DNA from: Macrostomum lignano
Lineage: Eukaryota
DNA length: 64,000 nucleotides
Reading direction: 5' to 3'
Assembly: GCA_002269645.1 (NCBI GenBank)
Contig: NIVC01003898.1
Span: forward strand, 1-64,000
This document shows positions 1 to 52,860 of this stretch, one piece after another (positions within the stretch are counted from its first letter, which is position 1; each line of letters begins with the position of its first letter). A model generated the notes under the pieces. It saw nothing but the letters and a program-made list of their open reading frames with translations. It was not told the origin of the DNA and made no database searches. The translations under genes were made by a program, and so were the position numbers.

Positions 1-3000
1 CTTAAGCGGTGGTTCCTCATACACTGCTCGGGCCTTGTATGCTGCCTCAGAAGAGTTCAGGCTGAGAGGCAGACGTGCAGCCCATAAGGTATCCATCCTA
101 GTTACTGACGGCAGAAACAGTGGCAAAATGTTGATTAAGCCGGCAGTGAAGAGACTAAAACGCTATGCTGATACTTCCATCGTTGTTGGCATAGGACGCC
201 ACGTGAGCGAGAACGAAATGCGTCTAATTGCATCCGATTACGCCTCAGACGAAATCAGGATATCGAACTTTAGACAGCTAGCTGGAATTGTTGACAAGGT
301 AGTGAGAAAAATCTGTCCTAAGGAGGCAAGCCAGTCAGACCCAAGCCCGGACCAAAACCCGGACCCAAGCCTGGCCCACGACCAGGACCAAAACCAGGAC
401 CGACGCCAGTACCAGGACCCAAACCGGGACCGAAACCAGGACCAAAGCCGGGACCAAAGCCAGGACCAAAGCCGGGACCAAAGCCGGGACCATCAAAATG
501 GCATTGATCTTTACTTCGTTGTTGACTCAAGCAGTTCTGTAACTTCAGATGAGTTCAACTTGATCAAGCAATACATTAAGTCATATGTCAACTCTATCGT
601 AGTCTCGCCAGAAGACACTAGAGTCAGTATTATTCAATACTGGGATCAAGTAACAACGACAGTCGACATCGAAGAATACAGAACCGTGAATGATCTTATC
701 CCTGCGATTGAGAACTTGAAGTATTTCAACGGTCAAAGATCCGTTCTTGGCGATGCGCTAATCCCACATCCAAAATGATTGCAAGGAATGAGCGAAACGT
801 ACCAAAGGTTGTTATTGTTATCGCTGGAACACCGCCAACAAACGGGGAAGCAATCAAAGACGCTGCGCCGAAGCTTATCTACTACGCTGATAAGGTTATT
901 GCTATTGGCGTCAAGAACCACATGCCCAAGACTGAATTGCTGCTGATTTCTACTACCGTGGAGGACACTATCATTATTGAAGAGTACTCGAAACTGCACG
1001 ACACCATCCCTGTTATTATCGAGAAGACCAAGATCAGCGAGCGAAAGAAGCGACCTGCTCCTGGTGGAACTGGTCAAGACATCGTGTTCATTGTGGATAG
1101 CAGTGACTCAATTGGCCAGACCAATTGGAATGTGTACATCAAGGGCCTGCTTAAAGTAATCACTGAGTACGTTGTTGTCTCACCATCAGACACTAGGTTC
1201 GCACTTATCCAGTTCTCGAAGCCAGCACAGGTTGTATTCGGCTTCAAAGACTACACTGACGGAGAAAGTCTTCGAAGGGCTATCAATAAGCTGAAGCCAT
1301 ACCATAGAAGCACCTACCCGTCAATCGGAAACGCACTGAAAGTTGCGGTTGACTATGTCAAGACAAAGAAGCGTTCCGGTGTGCCAACTTCAGCCATTAT
1401 TATCACTGCTAGCACTTCCTCGCCAGAGTTGGGAAGCCGATTGAAGAGGTCATCACAGAAGTCCAAGAGGTGTTCGACTACATTATTCCGGTGGCCATCC
1501 GTAACCGAGTGGACTTGCCCGACCTAGAGAAGCTTGCCAAGCCGGATTCGTCGATGATTATCACCACAGAGGAGCTGGATGAATTGATTCCGCTATCTAA
1601 GCGAATCATTTCTCTTACGACAGTTCGGCTAAGGCAGAGGCCACTTGTTTGCAGAAAACGAAGTCGCGGTGACTTCATCTTTGTCATTGGAGCCGGCTCT
1701 GAAACTGTTAAGCATCGATACTTTGAAGAAATCAAGAGCTTTATTAAAGGTTTCTCATCTGAATACGAGATCGATGAGGGTGCATCCAGAGGTGGAGTCT
1801 TCATTCTGGGATCAAGCTCTCAGAAGGAAATTGGATTGAACATGTTTAGAAGCGACATAGACTTTAGGGCAAGCATCAATAGACTATCTGCTCCGAGCTC
1901 CAGCACAGTGCACTTCCGATCTGGAATGGAAAAAGTTGTGCGCTATGCCAGACGAAGCCGAACAAAAAAGAGACCAGCTACATTGATTTACATTTCGGAT
2001 GGCAGTGAAGTAACAAAGAATGTTTACTCTGTGGCTCCTAAGCTCGCGTCTTCAATCCGAAAGACAATTGTTGTTGGTCTTAAACCAACAATAAAGAGAA
2101 GAGCGCTTCTAAGAACAATGGTCACGGATGTTCGTAATGATTTTGTTAATGTACGTAGAATCCGGGATCTTAGACGAGTCGCGAAAACAATCTCTGGAAT
2201 GACTTGCACTAGAACTAAGAAAGCAGCTAAAGTTAAGAAAACAGAGCCAGGTGTTAAGCGCATCGTTATGAAAGAAAGTAAGCGCTCAGTCACCAAAAAC
2301 GGCTCTAAAAGGCAAAAGACAAAGACCACCAAACGAAAAACTGTCGCAAAGAAGCAGACAAAGAGACAGCGAAAGACGACAGTAAAAATCGAGGGCCAGG
2401 GAGGCAAAAATCGAAAGCGTATTTCCAAGAAGATTATTAAAAAGAATCGAAGAAAGATGAAAAAGAAGATGTCAGTTATCTACGGAACAACAATAATTAG
2501 GGGTTCGCCACGCAGATACATCAAGAAAATTAAATTCGGCAAACGATGGTTTAAGACTCGGGTGATTCGCGTCCTCAAAGGACATGGAAAGAGACGTCGA
2601 GCTAGACGATATCTGCAGATCAGATACAGGAAAAAATGGATTCGATTCAATGTCAAGCGAAAAAGAGTCCAGTTCAGACGCCGATGGTACAAAATCCGAG
2701 TTACACGTCGAAGATTTTTTATTAGAATGAGAAGAAGATGGCGTGCGCTCCAAACAGCAAGAGGAAAGGCATTTGTGACTATCAAGGGTCGAAAGCGCAT
2801 CCTGACTAACAGGAAGCGACGCAACCGAAGACAAAGGAAGCATCGACGTCATATCAAAATTAGATACACCACTAAGATCATAAAGCACAAAAAGATACGA
2901 GTTCCGTCGAACGTAAAACTCGGTTTCAAAAAGGTTCCAGTGAAAGTCGTTTCAAGAAACGGCGCAAAAAAAGGGAAAACGTATAAAACATTGATTCGCA

Positions 3001-4586
3001 TCGGTCGTCGTTGGGTGAGATTCAGTACTAGACAAAGGCGAGTAAGAATCGGAAAAGGATGGTTCCGAGTGACCTACAGAAGAAAAGGACCAGGTGTTGT
3101 GCATCGAAGAAGATGGTATAAGATCAGGGTGACAAAGAAAGGTTTCAAGATTCGCGTGGCAAGAAAATGGCGAGGTCTAGTTACTACTCGGCGAAAGCTC
3201 TATATTCAATATAGAGGAAAAATCTCCCGAGTTGGAAAGCCGCTTGTCGTTCGCTCGCTGAATGGAAAATTTAAGAAGAGAAACAAGAAAAAGCGAGTTA
3301 GCAAGAACCCAAAGCGGCGACATGGTCGATCTAGAAAAAGCAAAAGGCGCCACCGGAAAACAAATAAGAATATAAGTAGCAAAAAGCCAAAACGCCAGAG
3401 AAAAATCACAAAAATCAGTCGCCGAAGCTTCACCAAGGTGAGCGGACGACCTCCGATCCGAATCCGTTTCACCATGAGAAAGATTAATGGCAAGAAGGTT
3501 CGCGTACCCAAAACAGTCAGACTTGGCAGGAAGGTCGTTCCAGTGAAGATCCAACCACGAACCATCGTTAGACGAGGAAAGCGCATCGTCAAAAAAAGAG
3601 TCCTTGTTCGCATTCAAAAGCGCTGGCACCCGTTCAGCGTTCGTCGCAAAAAGATCAAGGTTGGAAAGACGTGGGTTACCGCATACTACAGGAAAAAAGG
3701 CTTCGGACTCAGATACAAGCGTAGATGGGTCAGAACACGCATCACAAGGAGAAAAATCAGAGTTCGTGTCACCGGAAAGTGGAGACAAGTCATCGCAAAG
3801 AGACGCAAAATTTACATCCGCGGGCGCAAAAACAAGCGATACTACACTGGACTAAAAATTCCCAAGCATCTAAGAAGACGAAGCCGAAAGATCCGCTTCC
3901 GCAAAGGAAAAGGCGTCGTGAGACGATCACGAAAGATCCGCTTCCGCAAAGGAAAAGGCGTCGTAAGACGATCACGAAAGATCCGCTTCCGCAAAGGAAA
4001 AGGCGTCGTAAGACGATCACGAAAGATCCGCTTCCGCAAAGGAAAAGGCGTCGTGAGACGATCACGAAAGATCCGCTTCCGCAAAGGAAAAGGCGTCGTG
4101 AGACGATCACGAAAGATCCGCTTCCGCAAAGGAAAAGGCGTCGTGAGACGATCACGAAAGATCCGCTTCCGCAAAGGAAAAGGCGTCGTGAGACGATCAC
4201 GAAAGATCCGCTTCCGCAAAGGAAAAGGCGTCGTGAAAAAGCTTGCTGGCAGACACTCGAAACACAAGGCCCGAGCTGCCTTCGTGAAGAGAAAATGGTA
4301 TCACACGAAAGGAGGAGTTGTCGTTGAGAACGGTCGCAAAATTGTCCTGAATCGGCGCGGAAAGATGCGCCGTAGCAGCAGTAGTCGCAAAATCATGACA
4401 AGTTCCCATAGCAGCCACTCGCACAGAATTAAATTTCACAAGTCAGGAAACGCCTCCGCTGGCTCGTCCTCCAGCAGCAGCATGACACACGAAAGCCACT
4501 CGGTTGTAATGGGCAAGCCAAAAGTGCACGACTCTGGTTGGATAACCACTCATAAAAGCTCGTCTACCTCCTCGAGCAAGACGTAA
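1..4586 (+). CDS. Multi-vWA-domain protein with very long Arg/Lys-rich C-terminal region (5'-partial, four apparent frameshifts; could be a pseudogene or assembly errors)
   Basis: Frame is open from base 2 (LSGGSSYTARALYAASEEF...KVSILVTDG = vWA C-half). Further vWA starts are IDLYFVVDSSSS (~500), DIVFIVDSSDS (~1078) and a degenerate DFIFVIGAGSE (~1670). Frame changes are needed at ~320, ~499, ~763 and ~1420. ORF 1470-4586 is uninterrupted. Basic region runs ~2208-4380, then a Ser/His-rich tail, stop at 4586 and AATAAA at 4647. Confidence 0.8.
322..498 (+). repeat. Coding Pro-Lys-Pro-Gly (12-bp) linker repeat between vWA domains
   Basis: The frame starting at 322 reads GGKPVRPKPGPKPGPKPGPRPGPKPGPTPVPGPKPG..., with variation mostly at third codon positions (cca/ccc/ccg/cct, aaa/aag, gga/ggc). 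Confidence 0.7.
3875..4235 (+). repeat. 45-bp coding tandem repeat, 8 copies (RRSRKIRFRKGKGVV)
   Basis: Near-identical units cgtgagacgatcacgaaagatccgcttccgcaaaggaaaaggcgt, in frame within ORF 1470-4586. Confidence 0.95.
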
Positions 4587-4646
4587 ATTTAATGTTGGCA
4601 AGCTACAGGACTAACCTAAATGATTGTGGCTAACAAAAACTCTGAC

Positions 4647-4652
4647 AATAAA
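4647..4652 (+). promoter_or_regulatory. Putative polyadenylation signal of the vWA-basic gene
   Basis: AATAAA about 60 nt after the stop codon at 4586. Confidence 0.55.
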
Positions 4653-7530: not shown

Positions 7531-8964
7531 TGTCATAAATAATTTTGTTGCGATTTTGATTGATTTATGGCCGCACCTGTCATCTTTTTACGACCCTGTG
7601 GGAACTGATAGGATCTCCCGGTCACGTGATTCTGGGTGGCAACGAGCTTAGCCAATCAGAAAATTCGGCGCTCATTTTAACAAATCGGCTCAGCCAATCA
7701 GAATCGACGTGTTCCATTATAACAAACTGCGGTCCAGTTGGCGGCTATTTAAACCGGAGTTTTTGGCCCGCTCGGACTTCAACCTGCGTTTACCCTGGTC
7801 CCGGTTCAACCAACTTTTCTTGCGTCGGGCTGTCACGGCTGCACCGGCCAGGAATTGACCGTCGTTTCTTGATCCCCGGATCGCGACTCCCCCCATCATC
7901 ATCAAGGAAGAATCCCCCGGTCATCAGCAGTGAACATCAGAGTGAAGAGCATCACCTGCTAGCTATCAGCGAAGATTGTGACATCAGCAACATCCCGGGC
8001 CTACAGCTGCGAAGCACTAAGCCGATTCGATCACTGTGGATTACCTGGTCTCCGGCTGTTGAGTTTCTGATTGGTTGGGTGAGAGGCTACCTAGACTTGC
8101 TTGATTGGGTGATTCCCTATCTGTCCCCTGTTTCAGTAGCTGGATTAGGCGCACACTTTTGCTCATTTTTTTCAGTAGTGCTGTTGCTGAGGCAGAAATC
8201 ATTCAATAATACTGCTAGTAGTCTGAAACTCCAATTCAATCAGAAGTGCGAAGTGATTTGAAGAGAAGGCTAAATCTGACAGTTATTTTTATCGATTTTA
8301 TTTCTTTGTTCGCCGATGGCTCAGATGAGTAGCTAAGCTAGTAGGCGCCGGTCACAGTGGACCAATAGCAAGGCAGTTCTCAGTCGATCAATCAATCAAA
8401 TCAGTGAGCAAAACTGCCAGAAGTGCAGAATCGGCGCCAGAGATGTACTTTGTGCACTCTAGGCTAGCCAAGCGGCTCGGGTAATGAATCATGCGGTCTC
8501 TGAAGTTCGAGTTAGTCTATCTTCAGCGCTATGAGAGGCTAGTTGGCGCGTTGAAGGTCAAAAGTACAATTCTTCGTATTTAGCAATGTAATAGTACATG
8601 TAGCTACCCCATAGTCTCGCCACTGCAAGAATCCCCTGCACAAGTCCCCTCTGTACCTGCATGGCCAATTCGATCTAGTCCCAGCAGTGTCCCTTATCAT
8701 CGGCTATGACTTCGAGATTGACAGCAAAAAGACACTAGTTGGCAGGTAAGTGCAAAGCCCCTTCTAGTCGGAAGCCCGATTTCGAGAGTCCCGGTGTGGT
8801 GAGCCAGGACGTACGGGCTGGTGGCAGCGAGTTAGCTAACCTGCGGGTTAACTAATTTCTACCTTCAAAATTCTCCCTGCTTGTCTCTCGCTGTCCCTCT
8901 CTTAGCTATAGGACCTAGACTGCTCGCCACACGATCAAGCTACCATGGGGCTGACCATCTGACA
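7531..8964 (+). mobile_element. Possible LTR or LTR-retrotransposon remnant
   Basis: Begins TGTCA, and TGACA occurs at 8277 and 8960. Contains two gccaatcag CCAAT boxes and a TATA-like tatttaaa, as in the solo LTR at 44364. Flanks ggaa/ggag are only a 3/4 TSD match, so boundaries are uncertain. Confidence 0.3.
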
Positions 8965-12613: not shown

Positions 12614-12849
12614 CTGTCAATTGTCCGGTAAACAGAAACTTCAGGGGCCAATGAACGGTTGATTTGCCTTTTTTAGATTGAATCGGCTTAGATATGTGCA
12701 ATGCCTGCGATTAGAATTAAGTACGTAGACAGAATCCACAAATACCACTTCGATTGCTACAGATATCAACTTCAATCCTTGGATAAAAATGAGAATAATA
12801 TCGTTTAATATCAATTGAAGACCTCTAGACATCGACTTAAATCCCCAAG

Positions 12850-14478
12850 ATTCGAACTCAAACCCCTAGATACCAACTCAACTCCCGATGATACCATTTA
12901 AAATTTCCCCAGATACCAACTCAAATTCCATGGGTACCAACCCAAATCCCATAGATACTAACTCAAATCCCATAGACACCAGCTCAAATTCAATAGATAC
13001 CAGCTCAAATTCAATAGATACCAACTCAAATCCAATAGATACCAACTCAAATCCCATAGATCCCAACTTAAATCCCATAGATACCAACTCAAGTGCCCTA
13101 GATACCAGCTCAAATCCAATAGATACAAACTCAAATCCAATAGATACCAACTCAAATCCCATAGATACCAACTCAAATCCCATAGATCCCAACTTAAATC
13201 CCATAGATACCAACTCAAGTGCCCTAGATACCAGCTCAAATCCAATAGATACAAACTCAAATCCAATAGATACCAACTCAAATCCCCTCGATACCAACTC
13301 AAATCCCCTCGATACCAACTCAAATCCCCTCGATACCAACTCAAATCCCCTGAATACCAACTCAAATCCCCTCGATACCAACTCAAATCCCCTCGATACC
13401 AACTCAAATCCCCTCGATACCAACTCAAATCCCCTCGATACCAACTCAAATCCCCTGAATACCAACTCAAATCCCCTCGATACCAACTCAAATCCCCTCG
13501 ATACCAACTCAAATCCCCTGAATACCAACTCAAATCCCCTGGATACCAACTCAAATCCCCTCGATACCAACTCAAATCCCCTGGATACCAACTCAAATCC
13601 CCTCGATACCAACTCAAATCCCCTGGATACCAACTCAAATCCCCTCGATACCAACTCAAATCCCCTCGATACCAACTCAAATCCCCTGAATACCAACTCA
13701 AATCCCCTGGATACCAACTCAAATCCCCTCGATACCAACTCAAATCCCCTCGATACCAACTCAACTCCCGATGATCCCATTTAAAATTTCCCCAGATACC
13801 AACTCAAATCCCCTGAATACCAACTCAAATCCCCTCGATACCAACTCAAATCCCCTGAATACCAACTCAAATCCCCTGAATACCAACTCAAATCTCCTCG
13901 ATACCAACTCAAATCCCCTGAATACCAACTCAAATCCCCTGAATACCAACTCAAATCCCCTCGATACCAACTCAAATTCCCTGGATACCAACTCAAATCC
14001 CCTCGATACCAACTCAAATCCCCTCGATACCAACTCAAATCCCCTGAATACCAACTCAAATCCCCTGAATACCAACTCAAATCCCCTGAATACCAACTCA
14101 AATCCCCTGGATACCAACTCAAATCCCCTCGATACCAACTCAAATCCCCTCGATACCAACTCAAATCCCCTGGATACCAACTCAAATCCCCTCGATACCA
14201 ACTCAAATCCCCTGGATACCAACTCAAATCCCCTCGATACCAACTCAAATCCCCTCGATACCAACTCAAATCCCCTGGATACCAACTCAAATCCCCTCGA
14301 TACCAACTCAAATCCCCTGGATACCAACTCAAATCCCCTCGATACCAACTCAAATCCCCTGGATACCAACTCAAATCCCCTCGATACCAACTCAAATCCC
14401 CTGGATACCAACTCAAATCCCCTCGATACCAACTCAAATCCGCCGGATACCAACTCAAATCCTCTCAATACCAACTCA
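12850..14478. repeat. 21-bp minisatellite (gataccaactcaaatcccctc) in endophilin intron 3
   Basis: About 75 units in two blocks, each starting with the same non-unit header (actcccgatgat..catttaaaatttccccag at 12881 and 13764). Confidence 0.95.
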
Positions 14479-14493
14479 CAAACAGTCACTCAC

Positions 14494-14835
14494 CGCCTTC
14501 TTAGCGGGATCTTGCTTGGCCCGTTTAAGCCTGGCCTTGGCCGAGTCCAGATCCAGCCTGAGATTCTCCAGTGTCCGCCGCTCCCTCTGGATGGTTTTCA
14601 TGTCGCCAGCCAGAAACTGACGCATCGGTCGCAGCATGGCGGCATTGGCGGCGAAGATGAAATCGCGTTCCAGTTGCGCCAGTCGCTGCTCCGTTTGGCC
14701 AACTTTTACCAAGCTGTTGCCGTACTCGCTGCCCGGTCCCAACTCGTTGCCAGACGTTAGCAGAGCGGTACCCAGCTCCTCCAGGGGCGTGGGACGGTCG
14801 CGTTTGCCTCGTTCGAGTTTTTCGCACATCATGTC
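14494..14835 (-). CDS. SH3GLB1: Endophilin B exon 3 (BAR domain core)
   Basis: 342 nt, DMMCEKLERG...ELGPGSEYGNSLVKVG...DMKTIQRERRTLENLRLDLDSAKARLKRAK...KKA. Flanked by cgcAG and GTgagt. Confidence 0.92.
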
Positions 14836-15464
14836 CTGCGGATTGGGTGGGGGGGGGGTTAATATTAATAACTGCAGGAGAGCTGCTCGAGCAGACTTCG
14901 TCCTCCAGTTCCACCTTTGAGCGGGGGGTTCACAAGGTAGAAATTTCACAACGTCAAAAAACTCCCTTTTGAGAGGCTGCTCTGCCTATTCCGCTGACTC
15001 TGTGCCTGGGGGTGGGGGTTGGCCCTCATGGCTGTAAATCGCAAGACAAACCTCAACCGGTCAATTCCCAGATCATGCCAAATCAAGCTCCAGATGAATG
15101 TGGGCAGGGGTGCTTGTACCACCCTGTCTTATCCTTTAGTTAGTGTCTTATTGGCATTTGAAATGTTACAGGCTAAATCAGGGATTTTTCAAAGCCTCTC
15201 TATCCGGCCCTCGAGCGGATCCTTTAAAACTTCACATTAGCAATCCGGTCCGCTCAAGGTTTGCGTCTCTTCTCAGCTCTCTTCTCTCCCCTCATATATT
15301 TTCTTTTGTTCCTTCTCTCTCTCATCTTCTATTCCCTTTACTTTCCTCTCTCATCAGGCCGACCTCTGGGCTAAAGCAAGTCTATTTTTTATTAGAGGCA
15401 GGGGTTGTGTGCACCCTGGCGCACTTTAAGCGACATAGGCACACAACCGGCGAGAGGCATTACT

Positions 15465-24542: not shown

Positions 24543-24785
24543 CTAGGCTTGGTGATCTCGACTGCCCGTCAGACGATGAAACATTTGTTCGTTAATTTCC
24601 TGACTTCGGTCGGGCTTTCTCAGGCTGAGGAACACGTAGCCGCCGACCATTTCGGCCAGCGTTTTGCACACGGACAGCCGGGAGGCGAAGAATGGGCTGG
24701 GGACCAAAGTCATCTCGTGCGGCGGCCGGTTGAGGGTCAGACGGAAGCTCATTACCTCCCAGTTGACGGTCCAGGAGGCGAGTTC
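24543..24785 (-). CDS. FERMT2: Kindlin exon 3 (F3 subdomain C-terminus)
   Basis: ELASWTVNWE...CKTLAEMVGGYVFLSLRKPDRSQEINEQMFHRLTG, matching kindlin KQWNVNWE...HEFIGGYIFLSTR. Acceptor cccAG. The symbol marks the kindlin family, not a specific paralogue. Confidence 0.92.
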   Translation of the reverse strand, partial: ELASWTVNWEVMSFRLTLNRPPHEMTLVPSPFFASRLSVCKTLAEMVGGYVFLSLRKPDRSQEINEQMFHRLTGSRDHQA

Positions 24786-24943
24786 CTGGGTTCGAGTTGG
24801 AAACAAATTCAATGTGTTTGCTGATGATGATTAGGGCAACAAATTGGATTTACAATAGAAATTTTTCCCGGTTACAGGTAACATAGTTAAAAGACGACAG
24901 ATAGTTTCACGTAGCTAAAGCACCTGTTCCCGGCTATTCTCAC

Positions 24944-25210
24944 CTGGTATCGCCAGGTATTGAGAATATCCCCAGTCTGCACGTCCAGCCGCATAATCCT
25001 GTTAAACGCTACGCCAAACAGGGCGTCGTGATTTTTGCGTCGCTCTTTACGAAACTCGCTAAACGTCATCGGCTTGGAGCGACTCTCCGTGTAATTAACA
25101 AGGAAATACGCCACCCCGTGCATTGGCAATCGTTGCCAGGTGCGAATGTACTCCAGCTTCGACTCGAGTAAATTTAGACTCCGTACGTTTGCGTGGCGCT
25201 CCAAAATGCC
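24944..25210 (-). CDS. FERMT2: Kindlin exon 2 (end of F2, start of F3)
   Basis: 267 nt, GILERHANV...KLEYIRTWQRLPMHGVAYF...GVAFNRIMRLDVQTGDILNTWRYQ. Flanked by ctcAG and GTgaga. Confidence 0.92.
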
Positions 25211-25326
25211 CTGAGTACGAGGATTGAGCAAGCAAAATTTGTATTTATGCACAAAGTACTTAATAATCAGATTATCAGACTACAACTTCTACAACTTCAG
25301 CAAAACAAAATATCCGAAGTATTTAC

Positions 25327-27171
25327 CTGCAACAGAGCCCGACTCTTGTGCTTCTTCAGGCAGCGCAAGGCAACGAAATCGGCCACATCAATGTTGGGCA
25401 TGCTGTCAACAGTCAGCATTGGCTGCGGCCTTGGCGCCTGCATGTCCAGTCTTGTCAGGGTCTCCTTCAGTTCGCTGTCATAGAGACTCTTGCTAGCCAA
25501 AGTTTTGCCCCGAGACGCCAGGGAGATTGCAGCAACCCACTGGGCGTACTGGTCTTTGGTCTCGCAGCGGAGCCACACCTCTTGCATTAGTCCGGACTGG
25601 GTCAGGATGAACAAGCGGATGCCAAACTTTCTGGTAGTCATGTTCAAATCCGGCACAACTTCGGCATTTTTTAAATTGAACGACTCAACAAAGGCGGCCA
25701 TTTGACTAGCTGCGGCCTGGTCCGGGTACAGGTAGAGCGTCGTATCTCGCAGGGCAAAGAAGTACCGTTTGTAGTTCTTCAGAGTGAAACGTTTGGGTTT
25801 GAAAAATTTCAGGTAGCCAGAAAGTTCGGGCACCTCGCGCACCTCTGGCTGCTTCTGTTGAAGATGCTGTTGCTCCGACTGCTGACGCGACAAGTTCCCG
25901 ATGCCATAGTGCGCGTCCGACATCAGCGACATCTCTAGATCGGCCAGTGCAGCGTCGATTTCGTCATCGGCAGCCGTGTCCTCCTCTGTGACTGTAGCCG
26001 CCGCAGCGGCAGCGGAAGCCGCAGCGCCGGAATTTGACGATGTTGCTCGTTGAGGATCGTTTGCCTGTAGATGGCCCTGCAACTGCAGAGCAGCGAGCAG
26101 CATCATTTCCTCATCGGTGCAGTCGATCTCCTCAGTGAGAAGGGACCATTTGACCTGCTCGTAGATCTGGTTGATGCGAATAGCGTCATATTTGATGTTC
26201 AAATCGTAGAATGCAAAGTATTTGAATCGCAGCAGCAGTTCCTCTTCGCAGCCAGGTCGGACGCCCTGCTCCATTAGCGACTTGGACGAGTCCAGCCACG
26301 TGACTGACAGCATTGCTCGTTCGGTGTTGCTTCTCAACCGCTGAAGACCCTTCTCAGTCAGGGCCGTCTGCAACGGCACGTGTGGACTATTGGCCAAGTA
26401 GCTCTCGTCGGCACCCTCGAAAGCCAGCGAGTTGATGGACATCGGCGACATGAGGTTGGCGGACTCTCCTAGCCGAGGACTGCCAGGCGACTTTACCAGG
26501 CTGTCCGCTCCGTTTCCGTAGGGCAAAGTGCCCGCCGTCATTGAAGGCGCCTTCGGAACCAGCGGATTAAAGGCGTCGCTTCGTCTATTGTTCGATAGGC
26601 GCTTTCGCGAGTCCATAGTGTCATTGCCGCCGTTTCTATTGATCGATCGCGATCGGCGCATGCTGCTGAACCGGCTGGACTTGGTTGTCCCGACGCTGTA
26701 CGCGTAGCCGTCGCCGCCGCCGCCGCCGCCGCCCAGACCGAAATCTGCCGTGTCAATTCGGCGCTTCAGTGAGAGCTCTTCCGGGTGCCGGATGCCCAGA
26801 TCCTTGCAGATGCTCATCACTACGCTGAATACAGTCTGGGAAAAATTGACTCTAAGCTCCTTCTCCTGGAGATCGGGAAGCTGGAGGCGCAGCCAGTTGT
26901 GCATCCGATGGAATTCCAGCTTGGCGTCGGCTTGCACACCATTCTGGTCGAGAGTCTGTCGAGTTTTCAGCAGCCAACAGTTCCTCTCGGGCCACCAGAG
27001 CCCATGGTCCGACCAATCCAGCTTAACATCGATTGCTTCGACGAGTTTCAGCATGACGCCGCCGATGTGCGTCTCGCCGGAGACGCGGATGCGCTTGACA
27101 ATTTGCAGGTCTTCGACTAGTATGCTGAGCTCCCAGCTGCCGTCAACGTAAATTCCATGGCCGAGGTCCAT
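25327..27171 (-). CDS. FERMT2: Kindlin exon 1 (F0, F1, split F2, PH domain)
   Basis: ATG at 27171 in a gccATGg context. Contains DGSWEL, GETHIGGVMLKLVE, DWSDHGLWWP, WLDSSKSLMEQGV, LLLRFKYFAFYDLN and PH motif KPKRFTLKNYKRY. Donor GTaaat. The three exons join in frame to about 784 aa. Confidence 0.95.
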
Positions 27172-27687
27172 GGCGGAGAATCTCAGGCTCAAACTGAACT
27201 AGGCTGTCGACTGTGTTGTTTATAATATCGTCTGGTGGTTTTAGCTCGCGCGCTCGTGTCTTCTAAAAGCAAATGCTTTCTTGATCAAATTAGCTCAACT
27301 ATCCGTTGCTTTCGGAGTTGCAGAGTCCATAAGTAAATTTATTGATTCGTAAAATATTATAATAGATGCTTTTGCTAATAACTATTTTTTCGTCTCTCAA
27401 CGTAAACGCACTAAGCGCTGTCGATTGTATTTCCGTGCAGGAGTAAGTGAACGGCTTTTCCGCTTAGAGCAAAGCAGTACAACTCGCGATAGAAATGTAT
27501 GCTGGCAAACGGACCCTGGCACTAATACTACATATAAAGCCAAAGAAGAGCTCTCTTTTTTGTTTCTGCTCTTGAGTTCGTTTCCGTTCTACTCTTATCA
27601 GGCAAAGCCAGGCGTGCTTGAGCGGCCGCGAAGGGAGGGGGTTAGTGTTATTACAGCTCTCTCTCTCTCTCTCTCTTTGGTTTAGTC

Positions 27688-32307: not shown

Positions 32308-32495
32308 CTGAAAATTAAATTAGGAAAAGCAGATGTTAGCAAATTGTCTGCTGCTGTAATTTAAGCAATTCATTTTCTCCTACCAAAGAAAAGATCCCAG
32401 TAGGATAACATCAGAAAAGTCTGTGAATTTAAATAAATTAATATCGAGCAAAAGCTGCTCCCCTTTTAAGCGTCGACCAGTAGACACAGACTCAC

Positions 32496-35059
32496 AGTAA
32501 GAAGGACAATTGCTAGTCCGCAAGCTAGACCAAGCAGAACTGCTCCGCCAGCGGGTTCTAAACTCAGTAGATGGCCAGAAGGACGAAAGTTATTGCTCGA
32601 ATTAGCATTATCATTGATCGCTAAATCATTAGACATAGGAGTGTCTTTGAAGGTGCTGAACCACTGTAGCATTGGAGTGGCCAGCAGGGCAATGCAGACG
32701 GTTGCTGGCCATAGACATTGGCCCAGGGCCGAAGCTTCAACGCGCACGAGAGAGGGGCCTAGCAATGGAGTGGCCAAACACCAAGTCTGCGCTATCCACA
32801 GCCAAGTCACAGTCAGAGCTGTTGTAATCAGAACCGGAAAAAGGAGGCCATCGGGTTGGATCCACAGAATCAGCAGTGCCGCATAGCCAAGCAGAAGGCT
32901 AGAAAGCTGAGCCCAGCGTCCCTGATCGTTCAAGCGCATAGAGCAAATGCAGATGTAGCGAATCTTCCCAATCAGGGATTGATGGAGCCGCTGCTTTCTT
33001 GAACCGCTCCTACTCCCAAAATTTTGGGCCAGCAGCCTAGTCAACTCTTCGCAAGCAACTCCGATCAGGAAAGTTATACTGTAACACCAGAATATTGGGT
33101 GACTGCTCAATCCGGCAACACCCATCAGAGTAAGAAATAAGACATACATCAGTTGAAAACCGCACCAGAGCCAATATTGAGCTATTGGTCGAGTCAGGAT
33201 ATCAGTGAGTGACGAGATATTCTTCAAGGTCGAGGACTTCACAGCTTTAATTTTGCTTGAACGCTTTCTACCCAGTGCGGCCACCGTTGATTCCTCAATA
33301 ATAACCTCGCTACTCTCCATATCGCCACCGATCGCGGCAGTCTTGCTTGCTTTGTCTGCCTCAAACTCGTCGTTTTCAAAGCTTCCAGCTGTGCCACCGT
33401 CGTCCAATTCGATCCCGCTGTCCCCGTTCCAGTCGGCTATCGCAGCTGATCTCATCGCTGGCAAGAGTCGCAATCGAAACCCGCCAGGTACTGAAACCAT
33501 GTCCAACAGTGACAATCCGCCAATAGAGGGCCAAGGGCAGCGCAGGAAGGCGTTGCTACCAGACAGATCTGCAACGGCGCTGACCAACTCCAACGTCCAG
33601 CTTTCGCAAGCATCTGCGTCAGCCTCCGCGGAGTAATCGCACTGGCTGCTGTCTCTAAGTTTGCCCCGTGTCGGTGGTTTCGAATGAGACAGCAGGTGAG
33701 CACCGCTGCCGGAAGCGCGTCTAGATGCTCGCGACGAAGTAATCGGTAAGCCAGGCCGCGGCGTCCACTCAGGGCAGCCCACAAAGTCAGGCTGGACAGG
33801 CGAGAGAGGGACAGTTCGTCAAAACCGCACGTCAGGGCTGCCAGATGACGGGCCTTCGCGTCATCAGAGAGGTCTGCTGGGACCGATCGAGTGCTGTACA
33901 GCGCATGCAGCTTTTCTTCCGTTTCTAATCTTGGACGCAGCCGCTGCCAAAGAGGCGGACTCGAGGCCACTGCGTCAACGAGTCGATCTTGACCTCGCAA
34001 TAGTCCGTGAATAGCGACCAGCTCGGCTAGGTTGTCCAGGGTATCTGGGCAGCGAGTCAGACTCCGGATCAGAGACGGCGATGCGGATTCGAGTTGACGC
34101 GCTAGCGCCATCGGATCGGGGCGGCGACCGAACAGCAAGCGACGAAGCGTCTCAGATGTTGTCGAGAAGGATGGTGAAATTGTAGCGGAAACTGTGGCTG
34201 GGGTCAACGCTGGCGGCGTTGGGTCCTCACCAAACCTGATAAGCCTGAGGCTGGCGTGAAACTGACTAGCCCAGTCATTTTGACAGTCGTCTAATGGGTC
34301 AAGATTGTCATCGGCGTGCCTATCGTTCCGTCTGATTAAATGTCGTTGATCGGCGTCGCTACAGAGGTGACGCGCCAGGCTAAGAATAAGAGGCCCCGCG
34401 CAAGCAAGACGCGGCAGCGCCGTCGCGGTAGCATCTAATGCGGTCGCTCCGCGCCGATCCCTGGCGCCCAGCTCGGCGCGCAACTCCAACAAAAGTGCAA
34501 AAAGTGGCGCATCAGCTCGAATTGCAGCGACGTGAAGCGGACGCTCGCCTGCGCAGCCCTCCGCGTTTACCAGCGACAGATCGTGGCGCGCCAAGCAGTT
34601 AACGGCAGCAAGGCTGCCAGCCAAACAGGCTCGGTGCATCGCCGTGTCTCCGTCGGCGTCTACAGCTGCGGAATCGGCGCCGTGCAGCAGCAGTAGACGC
34701 AGGCAGCCGGTGGAGGCAGCCGACGCGGCCAAATGCAACGGCGTATCGCCCCGAGTGTTCACCGGGCCCGGGCGCGCGCCTAGAGCAAGCAGAGCGCTGG
34801 CTGCCTCGACTGCGTCTGACCTGGCGCAGTAGTGTAGGCCGGTATCGCCGAAACGGTCGCGAACCTCTGCATCGCCGCCGTGCTTGCCGACTAGGCGGAC
34901 AATGTCAGCCCGGTTGTCGGCGCACGCCTGGTGCAACAGCCGGGCTCCGGTGGCTTCGTCTACAGGCGCATTGATCGGCCGGTCGTTGGCGAACAGGGTC
35001 TCTTCCAGCTCGTTGATGACAGACAGTCGGGGCGTTCGAGGACCGGTCGAAGTTGACAT
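32496..35059 (-). CDS. Ankyrin/TRPM-like channel exon 1 (5-6 ankyrin repeats, MHR3/4-like region, S1-S6), with a -1 frameshift at ~33620-33700
   Basis: ORF 33452-35059 has GDT(P/G/A)(L/M)H ankyrin repeats and LTLWAALSGRRGL. Overlapping ORF 32466-33782 has pre-S1 and six hydrophobic segments (PIAQYW, ACEELTRL, LLGPSL). Donor LLT|GTgagt. The exon is 2564 nt, one base short of an in-frame length. Confidence 0.8.
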
Positions 35060-37629: not shown

Positions 37630-38160
<531 letters not shown>

Positions 38161-38932: not shown

Positions 38933-39529
38933 ATGTCAAACCGTCATCACCAACAAATTCGAATTTACCAGCAGCAGGCCCAGCATCAGCAATTCGTGTG
39001 GGATCTGCTGCCCAGTTCTGCGGCAACCGCTGCCGCCAACAACTTGGTCGCTCCGAGCGCCGAGGTCAACCGGGCGAGGTCGGCCACGTCGCATCAGCCG
39101 CGAACGCAGGCGCTGTCGCCTCCGCCACGGCTGATGTCAGGCGAGGAGGCGGCTCGCTTGGCGGAACTCTACAAGAGGAAAGTGGCGAAAAATTCGAACA
39201 ATTCCAAATCGGCTGAGAGACGCTACGAACTCGTGGCCACTTTTGCTTTGAAAAACGGTCGAATAACATCTTATTATTCGCATAGAAACCGACCGGACGC
39301 GGTGCCGTTCCAAATCACCGAGAGGCGCAGACGAATCCTCAGGGAGTATTACAGTCGAGGCGAGCAATGGATCGCTCTGTACGTCAACGAGATGGAATTT
39401 GAGCACTACATGCCCCTGCTCTGGTGCCGGGCCTCCACTATGGCTGATACAACGGCGGCAAATCAGCCAGCCTGCAATAACAGACGACGCGTCTCGAATA
39501 GTCTTAAGAACATTTTTGGACTTCGATGA
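38933..39529 (+). CDS. Single-exon hypothetical protein, 198 aa
   Basis: GC-rich ATG-initiated ORF standing out from AT-rich flanks. Gln/Ala-rich N-terminus as in neighbouring genes, and a complex aromatic-rich C-terminal half. No family recognised. Confidence 0.6.
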   Translation: MSNRHHQQIRIYQQQAQHQQFVWDLLPSSAATAAANNLVAPSAEVNRARSATSHQPRTQALSPPPRLMSGEEAARLAELYKRKVAKNSNNSKSAERRYELVATFALKNGRITSYYSHRNRPDAVPFQITERRRRILREYYSRGEQWIALYVNEMEFEHYMPLLWCRASTMADTTAANQPACNNRRRVSNSLKNIFGLR

Positions 39530-39609: not shown

Positions 39610-40298
<689 letters not shown>

Positions 40299-42025: not shown

Positions 42026-42262
42026 CTGAGGGGCCGGAGATGGAGGTGCATTCAACGGCTTTTATACATTTCGCCGTCATCCCGAGTTCCCTTCCAGTTG
42101 CTTCTTCCAATTGATCTCCAAAATCGTCTCTCATCCCAGAATATTGTCTCTTTTAAGGAATTTGGACTCCCTACAGGTCGTGTACAAAGAAGCTAAGAAA
42201 CCAACAATCCCCCTTCTGGATTCCGAGTCTCCTAAAGAGAGTAATCTCAAACTCGAACTCAC

Positions 42263-42533
42263 GCATCTCAGTGTGTTGAGAAAATTAGTCCGATAGCTTT
42301 TGCTGAAGGCGCAATAAATCCAGGGATTAACGCAGCAGTTGCTGATCCCAATCCACTGTACCAGCGATGGCAGCGCGGGACCAAAGGATTCCATGTAGAC
42401 TCGCACTGTCCGGGAGAAGAACAGCACGGAGATGAGGTGCAGCGGCAGCCAGGAGATGGCGAAGATGAGCACAACAGTGACCAGCATCTTCACTAGACGG
42501 CTCATCTGCCTGCGATCGTTGGCTGTTGACGAT
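42263..42533 (-). CDS. Neuropeptide GPCR exon 4 (TM6-TM7, helix 8)
   Basis: VKMLVTVVLIFAISWLPLH...ISNCCVNPWIYCAFSKSYR. Flanked by ttccAG and GTgagt. Confidence 0.92.
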
Positions 42534-42871
42534 CTGGAATGCGAGGAAGATGTGAACATACATGAAATCGAATTTTCATTTAATTATCTATCATATAATT
42601 AAATTTAGAGTAAGTTGTCCCAGTTACTACTGATGAGTAATACAGCTAGAATGCGTGTTTTTATCGAAAATATAACATAGTGATTTCAGATAAACAGATT
42701 GTGTACAGATTGTACAGCGCTGAGAATAATTAAATGACCAACCTGAATAACAACTGTTGGTTCTGCAGAGCGGCGACCCTATCACAACATGGGAGACTGG
42801 AACTCAACATCAAAAACACGGTACGTCGTACCTCCTGGAACGCACACAACATAACAGTCATGAAAAAGTCC

Positions 42872-43190
42872 AATTGCAGTCCCGCCACATCCTTGCAGTC
42901 CTGACACATCCTTGCAGTCCTGACACAACCATCCTTGCAGTCCTGACACATCCTTGCAGTCCTGACACATCCTTGCAGTCCTGACACAACCGTCCTTGCA
43001 GTCCTGACACAACCATCCTTGCAGTTTTGACACAACCATCCTTACAGTCCTGACACAACCATCCTTGCAGTCCTGACACAACCATTCTTGCAGTCCTGAC
43101 ACAACCATCCTTGAAGTCCTGACACAACCGTCCTTGCAGTCCTGACACAACCATCCTTGCAGTTTTGACACAACCATCCTTACAGTCCTG
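42872..43190. repeat. 19/23-bp minisatellite (tccttgcagtcctgacacaacca)
   Basis: The core tgcagtcctgacac is the reverse complement of the core of the array at 43600-43862. Confidence 0.9.
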
Positions 43191-43599
43191 ACAGGGGTTA
43201 CTCTGTCCCAATCACAGGATGAAAAAGCTTCAATATTCTTTGTTGCCATTTATTAAATACGATAACTCTGTAAAAATGAATTTCCAGCAGGGATCGGCAG
43301 TTCTCAATTTAGAATTAGGCCAAAGATAGAAGGATGCGCGGCAGAAAATATTCGTACATCCAATTAAAGGTGGACAGGAGACTCTCGAGAGCGCACTTTT
43401 AATCCCTCGGAATGGAATTTGCAGCCTCTCCCCAGACCTGGGGAGAAAGAAGGGCCTAGCTACTGAGAGGCTTGAGAGGGCCTTGAACTGTAGAAGTTGA
43501 TATCTTGGAGAGCCGATCCTTCGTACACGCCTTCATTTTCATTTTCATTTTCATTTTCAGGTCATTCCTCTGACCCCTGAGCACGCAGGCACACTGTGT

Positions 43600-43862
43600 C
43601 AAGGCTGCAGTGAGTGCGACAGGACTGCAGTGAGTGTGTCAGGACTTGCAGTAAAATGTGTCATCACTGCAGTGAAATGTGTCAGGACTGCAGTGAAATG
43701 TGTCAGTACTGCAGTTAAATGTGTCAGGACTGGCAGTAAAATGTGTCATCACTGCAGTGAAATGTGTCAGGACTGCAGTGAAATGTGTCAGGACTGCAGT
43801 GAAATGTGTCAGGACTGCAGTAAATGTGTCAGAACTGGCAGTGAAATGTGTCAGTACTGCAG
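43600..43862. repeat. ~21-bp minisatellite (gtgtcaggactgcagtgaaat)
   Basis: Inverted relative to 42872-43190. Confidence 0.9.

Positions 43863-51967: not shown

Positions 51968-52860
<893 letters not shown>

What the first reader, a model, noticed from the sequence alone, without database searches (positions are those of the whole stretch)
1..4586. Tandem vWA domains fused to a ~750-residue polycation: candidate glue, matrix or defence protein
Seen: at least four vWA domains, then a basic region in which 644 consecutive codons (2394-4325) encode no Asp, Glu or Cys, ending in a Ser/His-rich tail. The DxSxS MIDAS half-site is intact in domains 2 and 3 and lost in domain 4. Known: vWA domains are common extracellular cross-linking modules (e.g. 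mussel byssal PTMP1). The flatworm adhesive Mlig-ap1 has Lys/Arg-rich regions but uses vWD, C8 and lectin domains rather than vWA. Inference: this may be an undescribed secreted cohesive or coacervating protein (adhesive, mucus, rhabdite, egg capsule) that pairs with a polyanionic partner.
Basis: partly seen in the sequence, partly recalled or inferred. Interest (0 to 1): 0.75.

Follow-up and report, generated by a model that had tools for sequence, protein, structure and literature searches.

The report
vWA array fused to orphan polycation
The end of an animal gene encodes at least four collagen-VI-like vWA "docking" domains followed by a ~730-residue, acid-free, tryptophan-punctuated basic repeat region with no detectable relatives; it looks like a secreted glue or matrix protein, but its reading frame is broken twice in this assembly and no function has been tested.

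Summary
The stated features are all present at the stated coordinates. There are four vWA domains (the first cut by the window edge). A run of 644 codons (2394-4325) has no Asp, Glu or Cys and is 44% Lys+Arg. A Ser/His-rich tail follows, then a TAA stop at 4584-4586 and AATAAA at 4647-4652. Shuffles of the same DNA give about 36 stops and 71 D/E/C codons, so frame 3 is a real coding frame.

- The coding sequence sits in three frames. Two 1-nt deletions, near 772-775 and 1423-1431, break vWA2 and vWA3. Only the end of vWA3, vWA4 and the polycation share one open frame (1413-4583). This is either assembly error or a recently inactivated copy.
- No complete domain has a full MIDAS site.
- The polycation is organised. 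It has three diverged modules with four Trp each at 16-18-residue spacing, then eight identical 15-residue units whose DNA differences are all synonymous.

The vWA array is closest to collagen VI alpha3 and mussel PTMP1. The basic region has no true relative among 1.84 billion representative proteins, Pfam or PDB.

A secreted cohesive or matrix polycation is the best reading. It parallels the Lys/Arg-rich regions of flatworm glue proteins, but it is untested. The N-terminus, any signal peptide, expression and source organism are unknown.

The parts
2..325 (+). vWA domain 1, C-terminal two-thirds only (cut by the window edge), frame 2. It keeps the 'VTDG' Asp and the C-terminal Cys (KICPKE).
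   Evidence: Pfam VWA stretch; alignment
326..499 (+). 58-59-residue Asp/Gln/Ser/Arg-rich linker (D13, Q14), encoded by a degenerate 12-nt tandem repeat (338-492), frame 2. Frame 1 would read (PGPK)n but is closed by stops on both sides.
500..1005 (+). vWA domain 2: DSSSS present, 'TDG' replaced by IAGT, no terminal Cys pair. Interrupted by frameshift 1.
   Evidence: contiguous Pfam match 1-162/174 once one base is restored
757..778 (+). Frameshift site 1, frame 2 to frame 1, equivalent to a 1-nt deletion. The simplest repair is A4 (772-775) to A5, giving ...GDALIPHPKMIARNERNVPKVV... As assembled, frame 2 ends at TGA 776-778.
1072..1628 (+). vWA domain 3: DSSDS present, 'TDG' replaced by ITAS, no terminal Cys pair. 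Interrupted by frameshift 2.
1423..1431 (+). Frameshift site 2, frame 1 to frame 3, again equivalent to a 1-nt deletion and not in a homopolymer of 4 or more. Frame 3 is open from 1413; frame 1 runs on to a stop at 1525-1527.
1650..2213 (+). vWA domain 4: DxSxS lost (GAGSE), 'SDG' Asp kept, N- and C-terminal Cys kept. It lies in the same uninterrupted frame as the polycation.
   Evidence: Pfam E 8.4e-11; phmmer hits to collagen-VI-like proteins at 22-26% identity; alignment
2214..2405 (+). Lys/Thr-rich low-complexity spacer (about 42% K+R, with the last few acidic residues).
2394..4325 (+). Run of 644 codons with no Asp, Glu or Cys: 44% K+R, 8.7% W/Y/F, calculated pI about 12, net charge about +282.
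2406..2789 (+). Basic module 1 (shorter). Trp at ORF residues 360, 390, 406 and 424.
2790..3392 (+). Basic module 2 (Trp 515, 531, 549, 567) plus a K/R/N/S/H-rich spacer (about 3240-3392).
   Evidence: AF2 model is all beta-hairpins but pLDDT is only 46.5
3393..3866 (+). Basic module 3 (Trp 719, 735, 753, 771), about 40% identical to module 2 with identical Trp spacing (16, 18, 18).
3876..4235 (+). Eight tandem 45-nt units, each encoding RRSRKIRFRKGKGVV. The protein copies are identical, and every nucleotide difference is synonymous in frame 3 (Ser AGC vs TCA; Val GTG vs GTA).
4326..4583 (+). Ser/His-rich tail (86 residues, S 30%, H 9%).
4584..4652 (+). TAA stop (4584-4586) and AATAAA polyadenylation-type hexamer (4647-4652).

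Best explanation
This is the intron-free 3' 4.6 kb of a metazoan gene. Its 5' end lies outside the window. It encodes a large extracellular matrix or secretion protein.

The N-terminal part is an array of at least four diverged collagen-VI/PTMP1-type vWA domains, which serve as protein-protein or collagen docking modules. Continuous with vWA4 is a lineage-specific polycation of about 730 residues.

The polycation is an ordered repeat, not amorphous low complexity. It has three modules of about 130-150 residues. Each module holds four Trp at 16-18-residue spacing, within short 'hydrophobic-Arg-hydrophobic' segments joined by Lys/Arg/Gly turns. Eight identical 15-residue units and a Ser/His tail follow.

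Proposed mechanism (inferred): after secretion the vWA array anchors the protein to other matrix or glue components. The polycation binds polyanions multivalently through charge and cation-pi contacts. Candidate polyanions are sulfated glycans, acidic partner proteins, polyphosphate or charged surfaces, and possibly its own Ser tail if that is phosphorylated. The result would be a condensed or cross-linked cohesive gel or coacervate, in the way the Lys/Arg regions of flatworm Mlig-ap1 and ap3 are thought to work.

Shown: the domain content, the composition, the repeat order, translation-level constraint on the 15-residue units, and the absence of homologues.

Inferred: secretion, binding partners and material function.

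Caveat: as assembled, two 1-nt deletions break vWA2 and vWA3. This copy is therefore either mis-assembled at two bases or a very recently inactivated allele or paralogue.
For: - Coding reality: 0 stops and 0 D/E/C codons in 644 codons, against 36 and 71 in shuffles. The frame-3 stretch of about 1057 codons (1413-4583) ends in TAA followed by AATAAA.
- Constraint: the eight 45-nt units differ only synonymously, including a Ser AGC/TCA switch.
- vWA identity: Pfam E 2.4e-75 with 4 stretches. The best solved relatives are collagen VI alpha3 (4e-70) and mussel byssal PTMP1 (2.6e-18). The best database relatives are collagen-VI-like multi-vWA proteins of sharks, amphioxus and molluscs.
- Extracellular hint: the N/C-terminal Cys pair is kept in vWA4, and the C-terminal Cys is kept in vWA1. 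These are the positions where the collagen-VI-like hits aligned alongside also carry Cys.
- Ordered polycation: modules are about 40% identical with invariant W, F and G positions. Trp spacing is 16/18/18 in modules 2 and 3. AF2 predicts beta-hairpins throughout, though at low confidence.
- Furin-type RX[KR]R sites are depleted, 7 against 17 +/- 3.6 in shuffles. This is weak, but it fits a protein that must survive the secretory pathway.
- Precedent: Mlig-ap1 carries more than 3,600 residues of Lys/Arg-rich regions with pI above 14. Heparin blocks attachment in that system (PMC6410801). ap3 of Minona and Theama is a stand-alone secreted GRK(HS) polycation (PMC9229212). vWA domains occur in the byssal and stolon adhesives PTMP1, P-UF1 and ASP-1 (PMC12817120).
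Against: - Two frameshifts lie within 650 nt. They do not fit a simple homopolymer-error model: there are 8 runs of 4 or more bases in 1-1469, against 63 such runs and no shift in 1470-4586. The neighbouring kindlin gene reads through cleanly. A real inactivation is therefore plausible.
- The N-terminus and signal peptide are unseen, and there is no transcript or protein evidence.
- No MIDAS is complete, so metal-dependent ligand binding of the classical kind is unlikely.
- The structure model is low confidence (pLDDT 46.5).
- There is no global lag-2 hydrophobic periodicity (z 0.6), so the beta-hairpin picture rests on local patterns.
- Sequence relatedness to the flatworm KR regions could not be tested directly, and the exhaustive search found none.
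- The source organism is unknown.
Confidence: 0.45

Rival explanations
1. This locus is a recently inactivated pseudogene, or a degenerate allele or paralogue, of such a gene. The two 1-nt deletions are real. Translation from upstream stops at TGA 776-778, and the polycation is not made from this copy.
For: - There are two independent frame breaks inside conserved vWA cores, with no intron-like insert.
- They are over-represented in the homopolymer-poor 1.47 kb relative to the homopolymer-rich 3.1 kb: 8 against 63 runs of 4 or more bases.
- Other genes in the window read cleanly, for example kindlin with short introns.
- Exact look-ups found no ORF of this window in the 15-billion-protein collection, and word-index searches returned nothing. 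No annotated model of this gene was therefore found.
Against: - Apart from the two shifts, every segment is fully open in the correct frame, with strong vWA scores.
- The frame-3 stretch of about 1057 codons has no lesion, although any indel there would expose stops (21-31 per 644 codons in the other frames).
- Differences among the 45-nt units are all synonymous.
- Both lesions are single-base deletions. From my own knowledge, this is also the commonest residual error of long-read assemblies.
- Even if true, this reading says what the copy is, not what the gene family does.
Confidence: 0.35
2. It is a defence protein. The polycation, whole or cut into Trp/Arg-rich peptides, binds and disrupts negatively charged microbial envelopes or immobilises microbes in mucus. 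The vWA array tethers it to the mucus or matrix.
For: - The composition is extremely cationic and rich in Trp, Arg and aromatics. Motifs such as RRWYKIRV and RRWVRTRITRRKIRVRV resemble Arg/Trp antimicrobial peptides (resemblance from my own knowledge; sequences).
- There are eight identical 15-residue units, as in multi-copy peptide precursors.
Against: - Furin-type processing sites are depleted rather than placed regularly between units.
- There is no acidic pro-region adjacent to the cationic part.
- No similarity to any known antimicrobial family was found.
- At about 730 residues it is far larger than typical precursors.
Confidence: 0.12
3. It is an intracellular nucleic-acid or chromatin-binding protein, for example in sperm chromatin condensation or RNA packaging, that happens to carry vWA domains.
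For: - A net charge of about +282 with no acidic residues would bind DNA or RNA avidly.
- From my own knowledge, some vWA proteins are intracellular.
Against: - The vWA domains are of the PF00092 extracellular type closest to collagen VI, PTMP1 and von Willebrand factor. They keep the terminal Cys pair in vWA4.
- No histone, protamine or RNA-binding family matched, even at E<=1.
- The Trp-periodic module has no counterpart among known nuclear basic proteins in the searches run.
Confidence: 0.06
4. The basic 'protein' is not coding. It is a purine-rich, T-poor non-coding or satellite stretch that happens to lack stops in one frame.
For: - The strand is purine-rich (AT skew 0.355, GC skew 0.106 at 2001-4000).
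- The window is 25% tandem repeats.
- Long spurious ORFs occur on the opposite strand.
Against: - Shuffles that preserve base composition never give fewer than 18 stops in 644 codons.
- Only frame 3 is open, and it is continuous with vWA4.
- Arg uses both the CGN and AGR codon families.
- Modules have diverged to 40% identity yet keep W, F and G positions and the frame.
- Repeat-unit differences are synonymous.
Confidence: 0.02

Closest known systems
Collagen VI alpha3-type N-terminal vWA arrays (best PDB match 9han_C; database hits annotated 'collagen alpha-3/4/6(VI) chain-like')
   Same: Tandem PF00092 vWA domains, several with degenerate MIDAS. The N/C-terminal Cys pair is kept in vWA4. This is the best sequence match (E 4e-70 over the array; 22-26% identity for vWA4).
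   Different: No Gly-X-Y collagenous segment follows the array, so this is not a collagen. Instead there is an acid-free polycation with no counterpart in collagen VI. The domains are only 17-26% identical to each other.
Mussel proximal thread matrix protein 1 (PTMP1, PDB 4cn8)
   Same: It is a secreted structural or adhesive-material protein made of tandem vWA domains. It is the second-best solved-structure match and covers two consecutive domains (E 2.6e-18). It is described as a byssal matrix protein with two vWA domains (PMC12817120).
   Different: PTMP1 is about 450 residues with two vWA domains and no polycationic extension. Whether the present protein binds collagen or sits in a fibre is untested.
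Flatworm temporary-adhesion polycations: KR regions of Macrostomum lignano Mlig-ap1, and ap3 of Minona ileanae and Theama mediterranea
   Same: They have very long Lys/Arg(/Gly/His/Ser)-rich, essentially acid-free secreted regions with extreme pI. These are proposed to give cohesion by binding polyanions and to be released by a small anion (PMC6410801, PMC9229212, PMC8621496). Composition and scale are alike.
   Different: Those proteins pair the polycation with C-type lectin, vWD, C8, TIL and EGF domains, or with nothing, and never with vWA. They are described as low-complexity GRK repeats, whereas this one has Trp-periodic modules rich in Val and Ile. No sequence similarity was detectable. 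A direct comparison was impossible because the Mlig-ap1 sequence is not held as text. It is not shown that the window comes from a flatworm.
Polybasic components of complex-coacervate glues (sandcastle-worm Pc-1/Pc-2 type) and cation-pi self-coacervating mussel proteins (analogy from my own knowledge)
   Same: High density of basic plus aromatic residues. A Ser-rich segment could supply phosphoserine counter-charge.
   Different: There is no sequence relation and no DOPA or Gly-rich motif pattern. Phosphorylation and coacervation are untested here.

Membership tests
vWA domain family (Pfam PF00092) | Significant match to the VWA profile above the curated cut-off | tested here: met
   Scores of 104.6, 101 and 42.8 bits against a 23.8-bit cut-off in the three frame pieces. 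253 bits and 4 stretches after two 1-nt repairs.
vWA domain family: MIDAS-competent subclass | Complete DxSxS...T...D metal-ion-dependent adhesion site | tested here: not met
   vWA2 and vWA3 have DxSxS but lack the 'TDG' Asp (IAGT, ITAS). vWA4 has the Asp but GAGSE in place of DxSxS. vWA1 is truncated.
Extracellular collagen-VI/matrilin/VWF-type vWA | Cys near the N-terminus and Cys at the C-terminus of the domain (disulfide clasp) | tested here: inconclusive
   Present in vWA4 (LVC...MTC) and at the C-terminus of vWA1 (KIC). Absent from vWA2 and vWA3.
Collagen VI | Gly-X-Y triple-helical segment after the N-terminal vWA array | tested here: not met
   Translation from vWA4 to the stop codon contains no Gly-X-Y run, and Pfam finds only VWA. 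The 5' part of the gene is unseen.
PTMP1-like byssal matrix proteins | Secreted protein of two vWA domains that binds collagen in a byssal thread | not testable with these tools
   Only sequence similarity could be shown (4cn8, E 2.6e-18). The architecture differs (at least 4 vWA plus a polycation). Secretion and collagen binding are untested.
Flatworm ap1/ap3-type cohesive polycations | Very long, acid-free Lys/Arg-rich region with extreme pI | tested here: met
   644 codons without D/E/C, 44% K+R, calculated pI about 12, about +282 charge. Compare pI above 14 and more than 3,600 residues in Mlig-ap1 (PMC6410801).
Flatworm ap1/ap3-type cohesive polycations | Sequence homology to Mlig-ap1 KR regions or ap3 | tested here: inconclusive
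   No hit to residues 300-800 in 1.84 billion representatives. It is not known whether ap1/ap3 are in that library, and HMMER's composition correction penalises such matches. The Mlig-ap1 sequence was not retrievable.
Flatworm ap1-type cohesive protein | Core of C-type lectin, vWD, C8, TIL and EGF domains | tested here: not met
   Pfam finds only VWA in the 4.6 kb present. Upstream sequence is unseen.
Secreted adhesive or matrix proteins in general | N-terminal signal peptide; expression in gland cells; presence in the secretion | not testable with these tools
   The window begins inside vWA1, and no expression or proteome data are available.
Processed or unitary pseudogene | Frame-disrupting lesions in otherwise homologous coding sequence | tested here: inconclusive
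   There are two 1-nt deletions but no other lesion in 4.6 kb. Without reads, they cannot be told apart from assembly errors.

The most novel reading that the evidence does not exclude
The Trp-periodic, acid-free module is a previously unrecognised polyanion-binding or self-assembling beta-repeat. It has four Trp per module at 16-18-residue spacing and the pattern hRhx-[KR]2-3-W-hRhxh. Under this reading the intact gene encodes the cohesive or gel-forming component of an invertebrate secretion (glue, rhabdite or mucus rod, egg-capsule cement). This would be a new architecture in which collagen-VI-type vWA docking domains are coupled directly to a structured polycation. It would found a new protein family with no relatives in current databases.
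Probability: 0.25. Interest if true: 0.7.

Novelty: new variant of a known kind. Interest (0 to 1): 0.5.

Why it matters
Secreted polycations are central to the only molecular model of reversible animal adhesion, that of flatworm ap1/ap3, and to coacervate glues. The known examples are described as featureless low-complexity sequence, and their mechanism remains enigmatic.

A polycation with ordered Trp-containing modules, attached to well-understood vWA docking domains, would be a tractable object. Single modules could be expressed and tested for polyanion binding, folding and phase behaviour.

It would also show that vWA arrays, known from byssus and collagen VI, have been recruited to charge-based cohesion.

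If the locus is instead a dead copy, it is still a marker for finding the live paralogue.

Tried and rejected
- Word-index homology searches with the 1038-residue ORF and with vWA2-3 found nothing at E<=1e-3. The first probably saturated at 8000 low-complexity candidates.
Exact look-ups of 10 window ORFs found none in the collection. Rfam and tRNA scans of the window were empty. The organism is therefore unknown beyond metazoan. Compatibility with Macrostomum lignano (repeat-rich, PacBio-based assembly, PMC5730564) is only circumstantial.
- The phmmer hits on residues 803-926 (P0011, P0039 and others) and on the tail (a Paenibacillus protein) were inspected. They are repeat-versus-repeat or low-complexity artefacts.
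- The search for related loci with the module alignment found no tblastn-confirmed relatives in metagenome or viral contigs.
- AlphaFold2 on module 2 with the three-row internal alignment gave pLDDT 46.5. This is too low for a fold search, so none was run.
- A global amphipathic beta periodicity was tested and not found (lag-2 z = 0.6). Only nine local alternating segments exist.
- Programmed ribosomal frameshifting was considered. Site 1 (A AAA TGA) would need a -1/+2 shift. Site 2 has no slippery sequence or nearby stop. It was rejected as unsupported.
- Tiny introns at the shift sites were rejected. The vWA alignment is continuous with no extra bases.
- The alternative (PGPK)n reading of the vWA1-vWA2 linker is closed by stops on both sides.
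- Opposite-strand and alternative-frame ORFs have no Pfam match and are explained by base composition.
- tblastn of the ORF against the rest of the window found no paralogue.

Full report
**What the window is.** The 64-kb window is animal genomic DNA. Tandem repeats cover about 25% of it (66 TRF rows). It also holds several other genes:
- a kindlin gene, with Kindlin_2_N, FERM_M and PH domains and short introns;
- a BAR-domain exon;
- an ankyrin-repeat gene;
- a rhodopsin-type GPCR fragment.

No Rfam family or tRNA was found. I could not determine the species. The homology search meant for that purpose timed out three times and exhausted the cap. Ten window ORFs are absent from the 15-billion-protein collection by exact look-up. 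The repeat load is compatible with what is published for Macrostomum lignano, where simple and tandem repeats make up 15% of a PacBio-based assembly polished with Pilon (PMC5730564). That is not evidence of origin.

**Checking the observation.**
- Pfam VWA (PF00092) matches all three coding pieces.
- The longest D/E/C-free run in frame 3 is exactly 644 codons at 2394-4325. It contains R158, K124, V63, G53 and I52, and is 44% K+R.
- The net charge is about +282 and the calculated pI about 12.
- The last 86 residues are 30% Ser and 9% His.
- DxSxS reads DSSSS in domain 2, DSSDS in domain 3 and GAGSE in domain 4.

The run is far beyond chance. In 1000 shuffles of the same 1932 nt, the mean was 36 in-frame stops (minimum 18) and 71 D/E/C codons (minimum 45). 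The observed counts are 0 and 0. The other two forward frames contain 31 and 21 stops. The ORF ends at TAA 4584-4586, with AATAAA at 4647-4652.

Coding runs in frame 2 from the window edge to about 774, where TGA follows at 776-778. It then runs in frame 1 to about 1428, and in frame 3 from 1413 to 4583.

Both changes lie inside vWA cores, and the domain alignment continues without extra residues. They are therefore single-base deletions, not introns.
- Adding one A to the A4 run at 772-775 gives ...GDALIPHPKMIARNERNVPKVVIVIAG...
- Adding one base near 1427 gives ...IIITASTSSPxVGKPIEEV...

With these two repairs, Pfam reports four VWA stretches at E 2.4e-75. Domain 2 then matches profile positions 1-162 of 174 in one piece.

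I cannot decide whether the deletions are assembly errors or real. Evidence against simple homopolymer error:
- The first 1469 nt hold only 8 runs of 4 or more bases yet carry both shifts.
- The 3117-nt ORF holds 63 such runs and carries no shift.
- Site 2 is not in a homopolymer.
- Kindlin reads cleanly.

Evidence against an old pseudogene:
- Every segment is otherwise fully open in its proper frame.
- The polycation ORF has no lesion, although any indel there would expose stops at once.

I put about 0.35 on a real, very recent inactivation of this copy.

**The vWA array.** The four domains are only 17-26% identical to one another, so the array is old. No complete domain has a full MIDAS.
- Domains 2 and 3 keep DxSxS but have lost the 'TDG' Asp (IAGT, ITAS).
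- Domain 4 keeps the Asp (ISDG) but has lost DxSxS.
- Domain 1 keeps VTDG, but its N-terminal half is outside the window.

Domain 4 keeps a Cys before strand beta1 and a Cys at its C-terminus (LVC...MTC), and domain 1 ends in KIC. These are the positions where the collagen-VI-like reference domains aligned alongside also have Cys. From established knowledge of VWF, matrilin and collagen VI A-domains, this pair forms a disulfide clasp in extracellular vWA domains.

The best solved relatives are collagen VI alpha3 (9han_C, E 4e-70 over the array) and mussel proximal thread matrix protein 1 (4cn8, E 2.6e-18 over two domains).

An exhaustive phmmer search of 1.84 billion representatives gave 78 hits. 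Nearly all fell on domain 4 at 22-26% identity. The ones looked up (ten) are annotated as collagen-VI-like or are uncharacterised multi-vWA proteins of sharks, amphioxus, bivalves and abalone. No Gly-X-Y segment follows the array, so this is not a collagen.

A 58-59-residue Asp/Gln-rich linker separates domains 1 and 2. It is encoded by a degenerate 12-nt repeat.

**The polycation is ordered.** After a Lys/Thr-rich spacer come three modules, at ORF residues about 313-440, 441-641 and 642-800. Modules 2 and 3 are about 40% identical. All three share invariant W, F, G and R positions.

Trp falls at residues 360/390/406/424, 515/531/549/567 and 719/735/753/771. The spacing is 16, 18, 18 in both full modules. 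Each Trp sits in the same context, roughly h-R-h-x-[K/R]2-3-W-h-R-h-x-h. This reads as short strands joined by basic or Gly turns.

AlphaFold2 with the three-row internal alignment predicts beta-hairpins throughout, but at pLDDT 46.5. I treat that as weak support only and ran no fold search. A global lag-2 hydrophobic periodicity is absent (z 0.6). Only nine local alternating segments exist.

Eight tandem 45-nt units follow, at 3876-4235, each encoding RRSRKIRFRKGKGVV. The eight peptides are identical. The nucleotide differences are all synonymous in frame 3: Ser AGC against TCA in unit 1, and Val GTG against GTA in units 2-3. This is direct, if small, evidence that this frame is the one under selection.

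Arg uses both CGN and AGR codons, so the region is not a simple purine microsatellite. Furin-type RX[KR]R motifs are fewer than composition predicts, 7 against 17 +/- 3.6. This is a weak hint of selection against convertase cleavage.

**No relatives for the basic part.**
- There is no hit to residues 300-800 in the exhaustive search.
- The hits on the 15-mer array and the tail are repeat or low-complexity artefacts.
- Pfam and PDB gave nothing, even at E<=1.
- Metagenome and viral contigs gave no confirmed relative.
- There is no paralogue elsewhere in the window.

**How it most likely works.** The best-supported reading is a large extracellular protein with two parts. The vWA array docks onto other matrix or secretion proteins. 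The polycation supplies multivalent electrostatic and cation-pi bonding to polyanions, producing a cohesive gel or coacervate. Aromatic residues make up 8.7% of the polycation. The Ser/His tail could add phosphoserine counter-charge or metal cross-links.

Only the anatomy is shown. Secretion, binding partners and material role are inferred.

The closest functional precedent is flatworm temporary adhesion.
- Mlig-ap1 has more than 3,600 residues of Lys/Arg-rich regions with pI above 14.
- In that system, heparin blocks attachment and added cations block release (PMC6410801).
- In Minona and Theama the polycation is a separate secreted protein, ap3, with a GRKHS motif (PMC9229212).

Those proteins use lectin, vWD, C8, TIL and EGF domains, never vWA, and are described as low complexity. 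vWA domains do occur in other adhesives, such as PTMP1, P-UF1 and ASP-1 (PMC12817120). I could not compare sequences with Mlig-ap1 directly because its sequence is held only as an image.

**Rivals.**
- A recently dead copy (0.35). This is compatible with the functional reading for the gene family.
- A defence polycation or peptide precursor (0.12). The Arg/Trp motifs and identical 15-mers favour it. The depleted processing sites and the size count against it.
- An intracellular nucleic-acid binder (0.06). The extracellular-type vWA domains count against it.
- A non-coding artefact (0.02). This is refuted.

I rate it a new variant of a known kind: a secreted Lys/Arg polycation of adhesive or matrix type, here in a new architecture with an ordered, orphan repeat. 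Interest is 0.5.

Noticed in passing
window 24560-27192 (-): A kindlin (fermitin-family) gene. It has a 631-codon first exon with Kindlin_2_N, FERM_M and PH domains, followed by at least two further exons separated by introns of about 90-130 nt. It reads through without frame breaks. GC3 is 0.69, much higher than the vWA/polycation gene (0.43-0.53).
   Followed up: partly
window 32466-35059 (-): An ankyrin-repeat ORF (535 aa, 33452-35059) overlaps by 331 nt, in a different frame, a 438-aa ORF (32466-33782) that looks hydrophobic and membrane-like but has no Pfam hit. This may be one gene with a frame change or an unrecognised intron. If it is a frameshift, it would bear on the assembly-error question.
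   Followed up: no
window 12835-14949: A 1.6-kb minisatellite (21-nt unit, 78 copies, 90% matches) directly abuts a BAR-domain (endophilin-like) exon at 14476-14949 (-).
   Followed up: no
window 42134-42559 (-): A C-terminal fragment (TM5-TM7) of a rhodopsin-family GPCR (7tm_1, E 8e-14), flanked by 21-23-nt minisatellites at 42888-43193 and 43595-43862.
   Followed up: no
whole window: About 25% of the window is micro- or minisatellite. Examples are long perfect tetranucleotide arrays ((AGTA)172 at 39610-40298, (GATA)133 at 37630-38160, (TAGA)222 at 51969-52858) and many 19-33-nt minisatellites of 0.3-1.6 kb. GC content swings between 0.31 and 0.55 per 2 kb.
   Followed up: partly
window 338-492 (+): The DNA encoding the vWA1-vWA2 linker is a degenerate 12-nt repeat. 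It reads as an Asp/Gln-rich acidic linker in the open frame but as (PGPK)n in frame 1. Given the frameshifts elsewhere in this gene, the true reading of the linker deserves a check against cDNA.
   Followed up: partly
window 38933-39529 (+): An ATG-initiated 198-codon ORF, Gln/Ala-rich at the N-terminus, with no Pfam match. It lies between two long tetranucleotide arrays and may be a small orphan gene or an exon.
   Followed up: no
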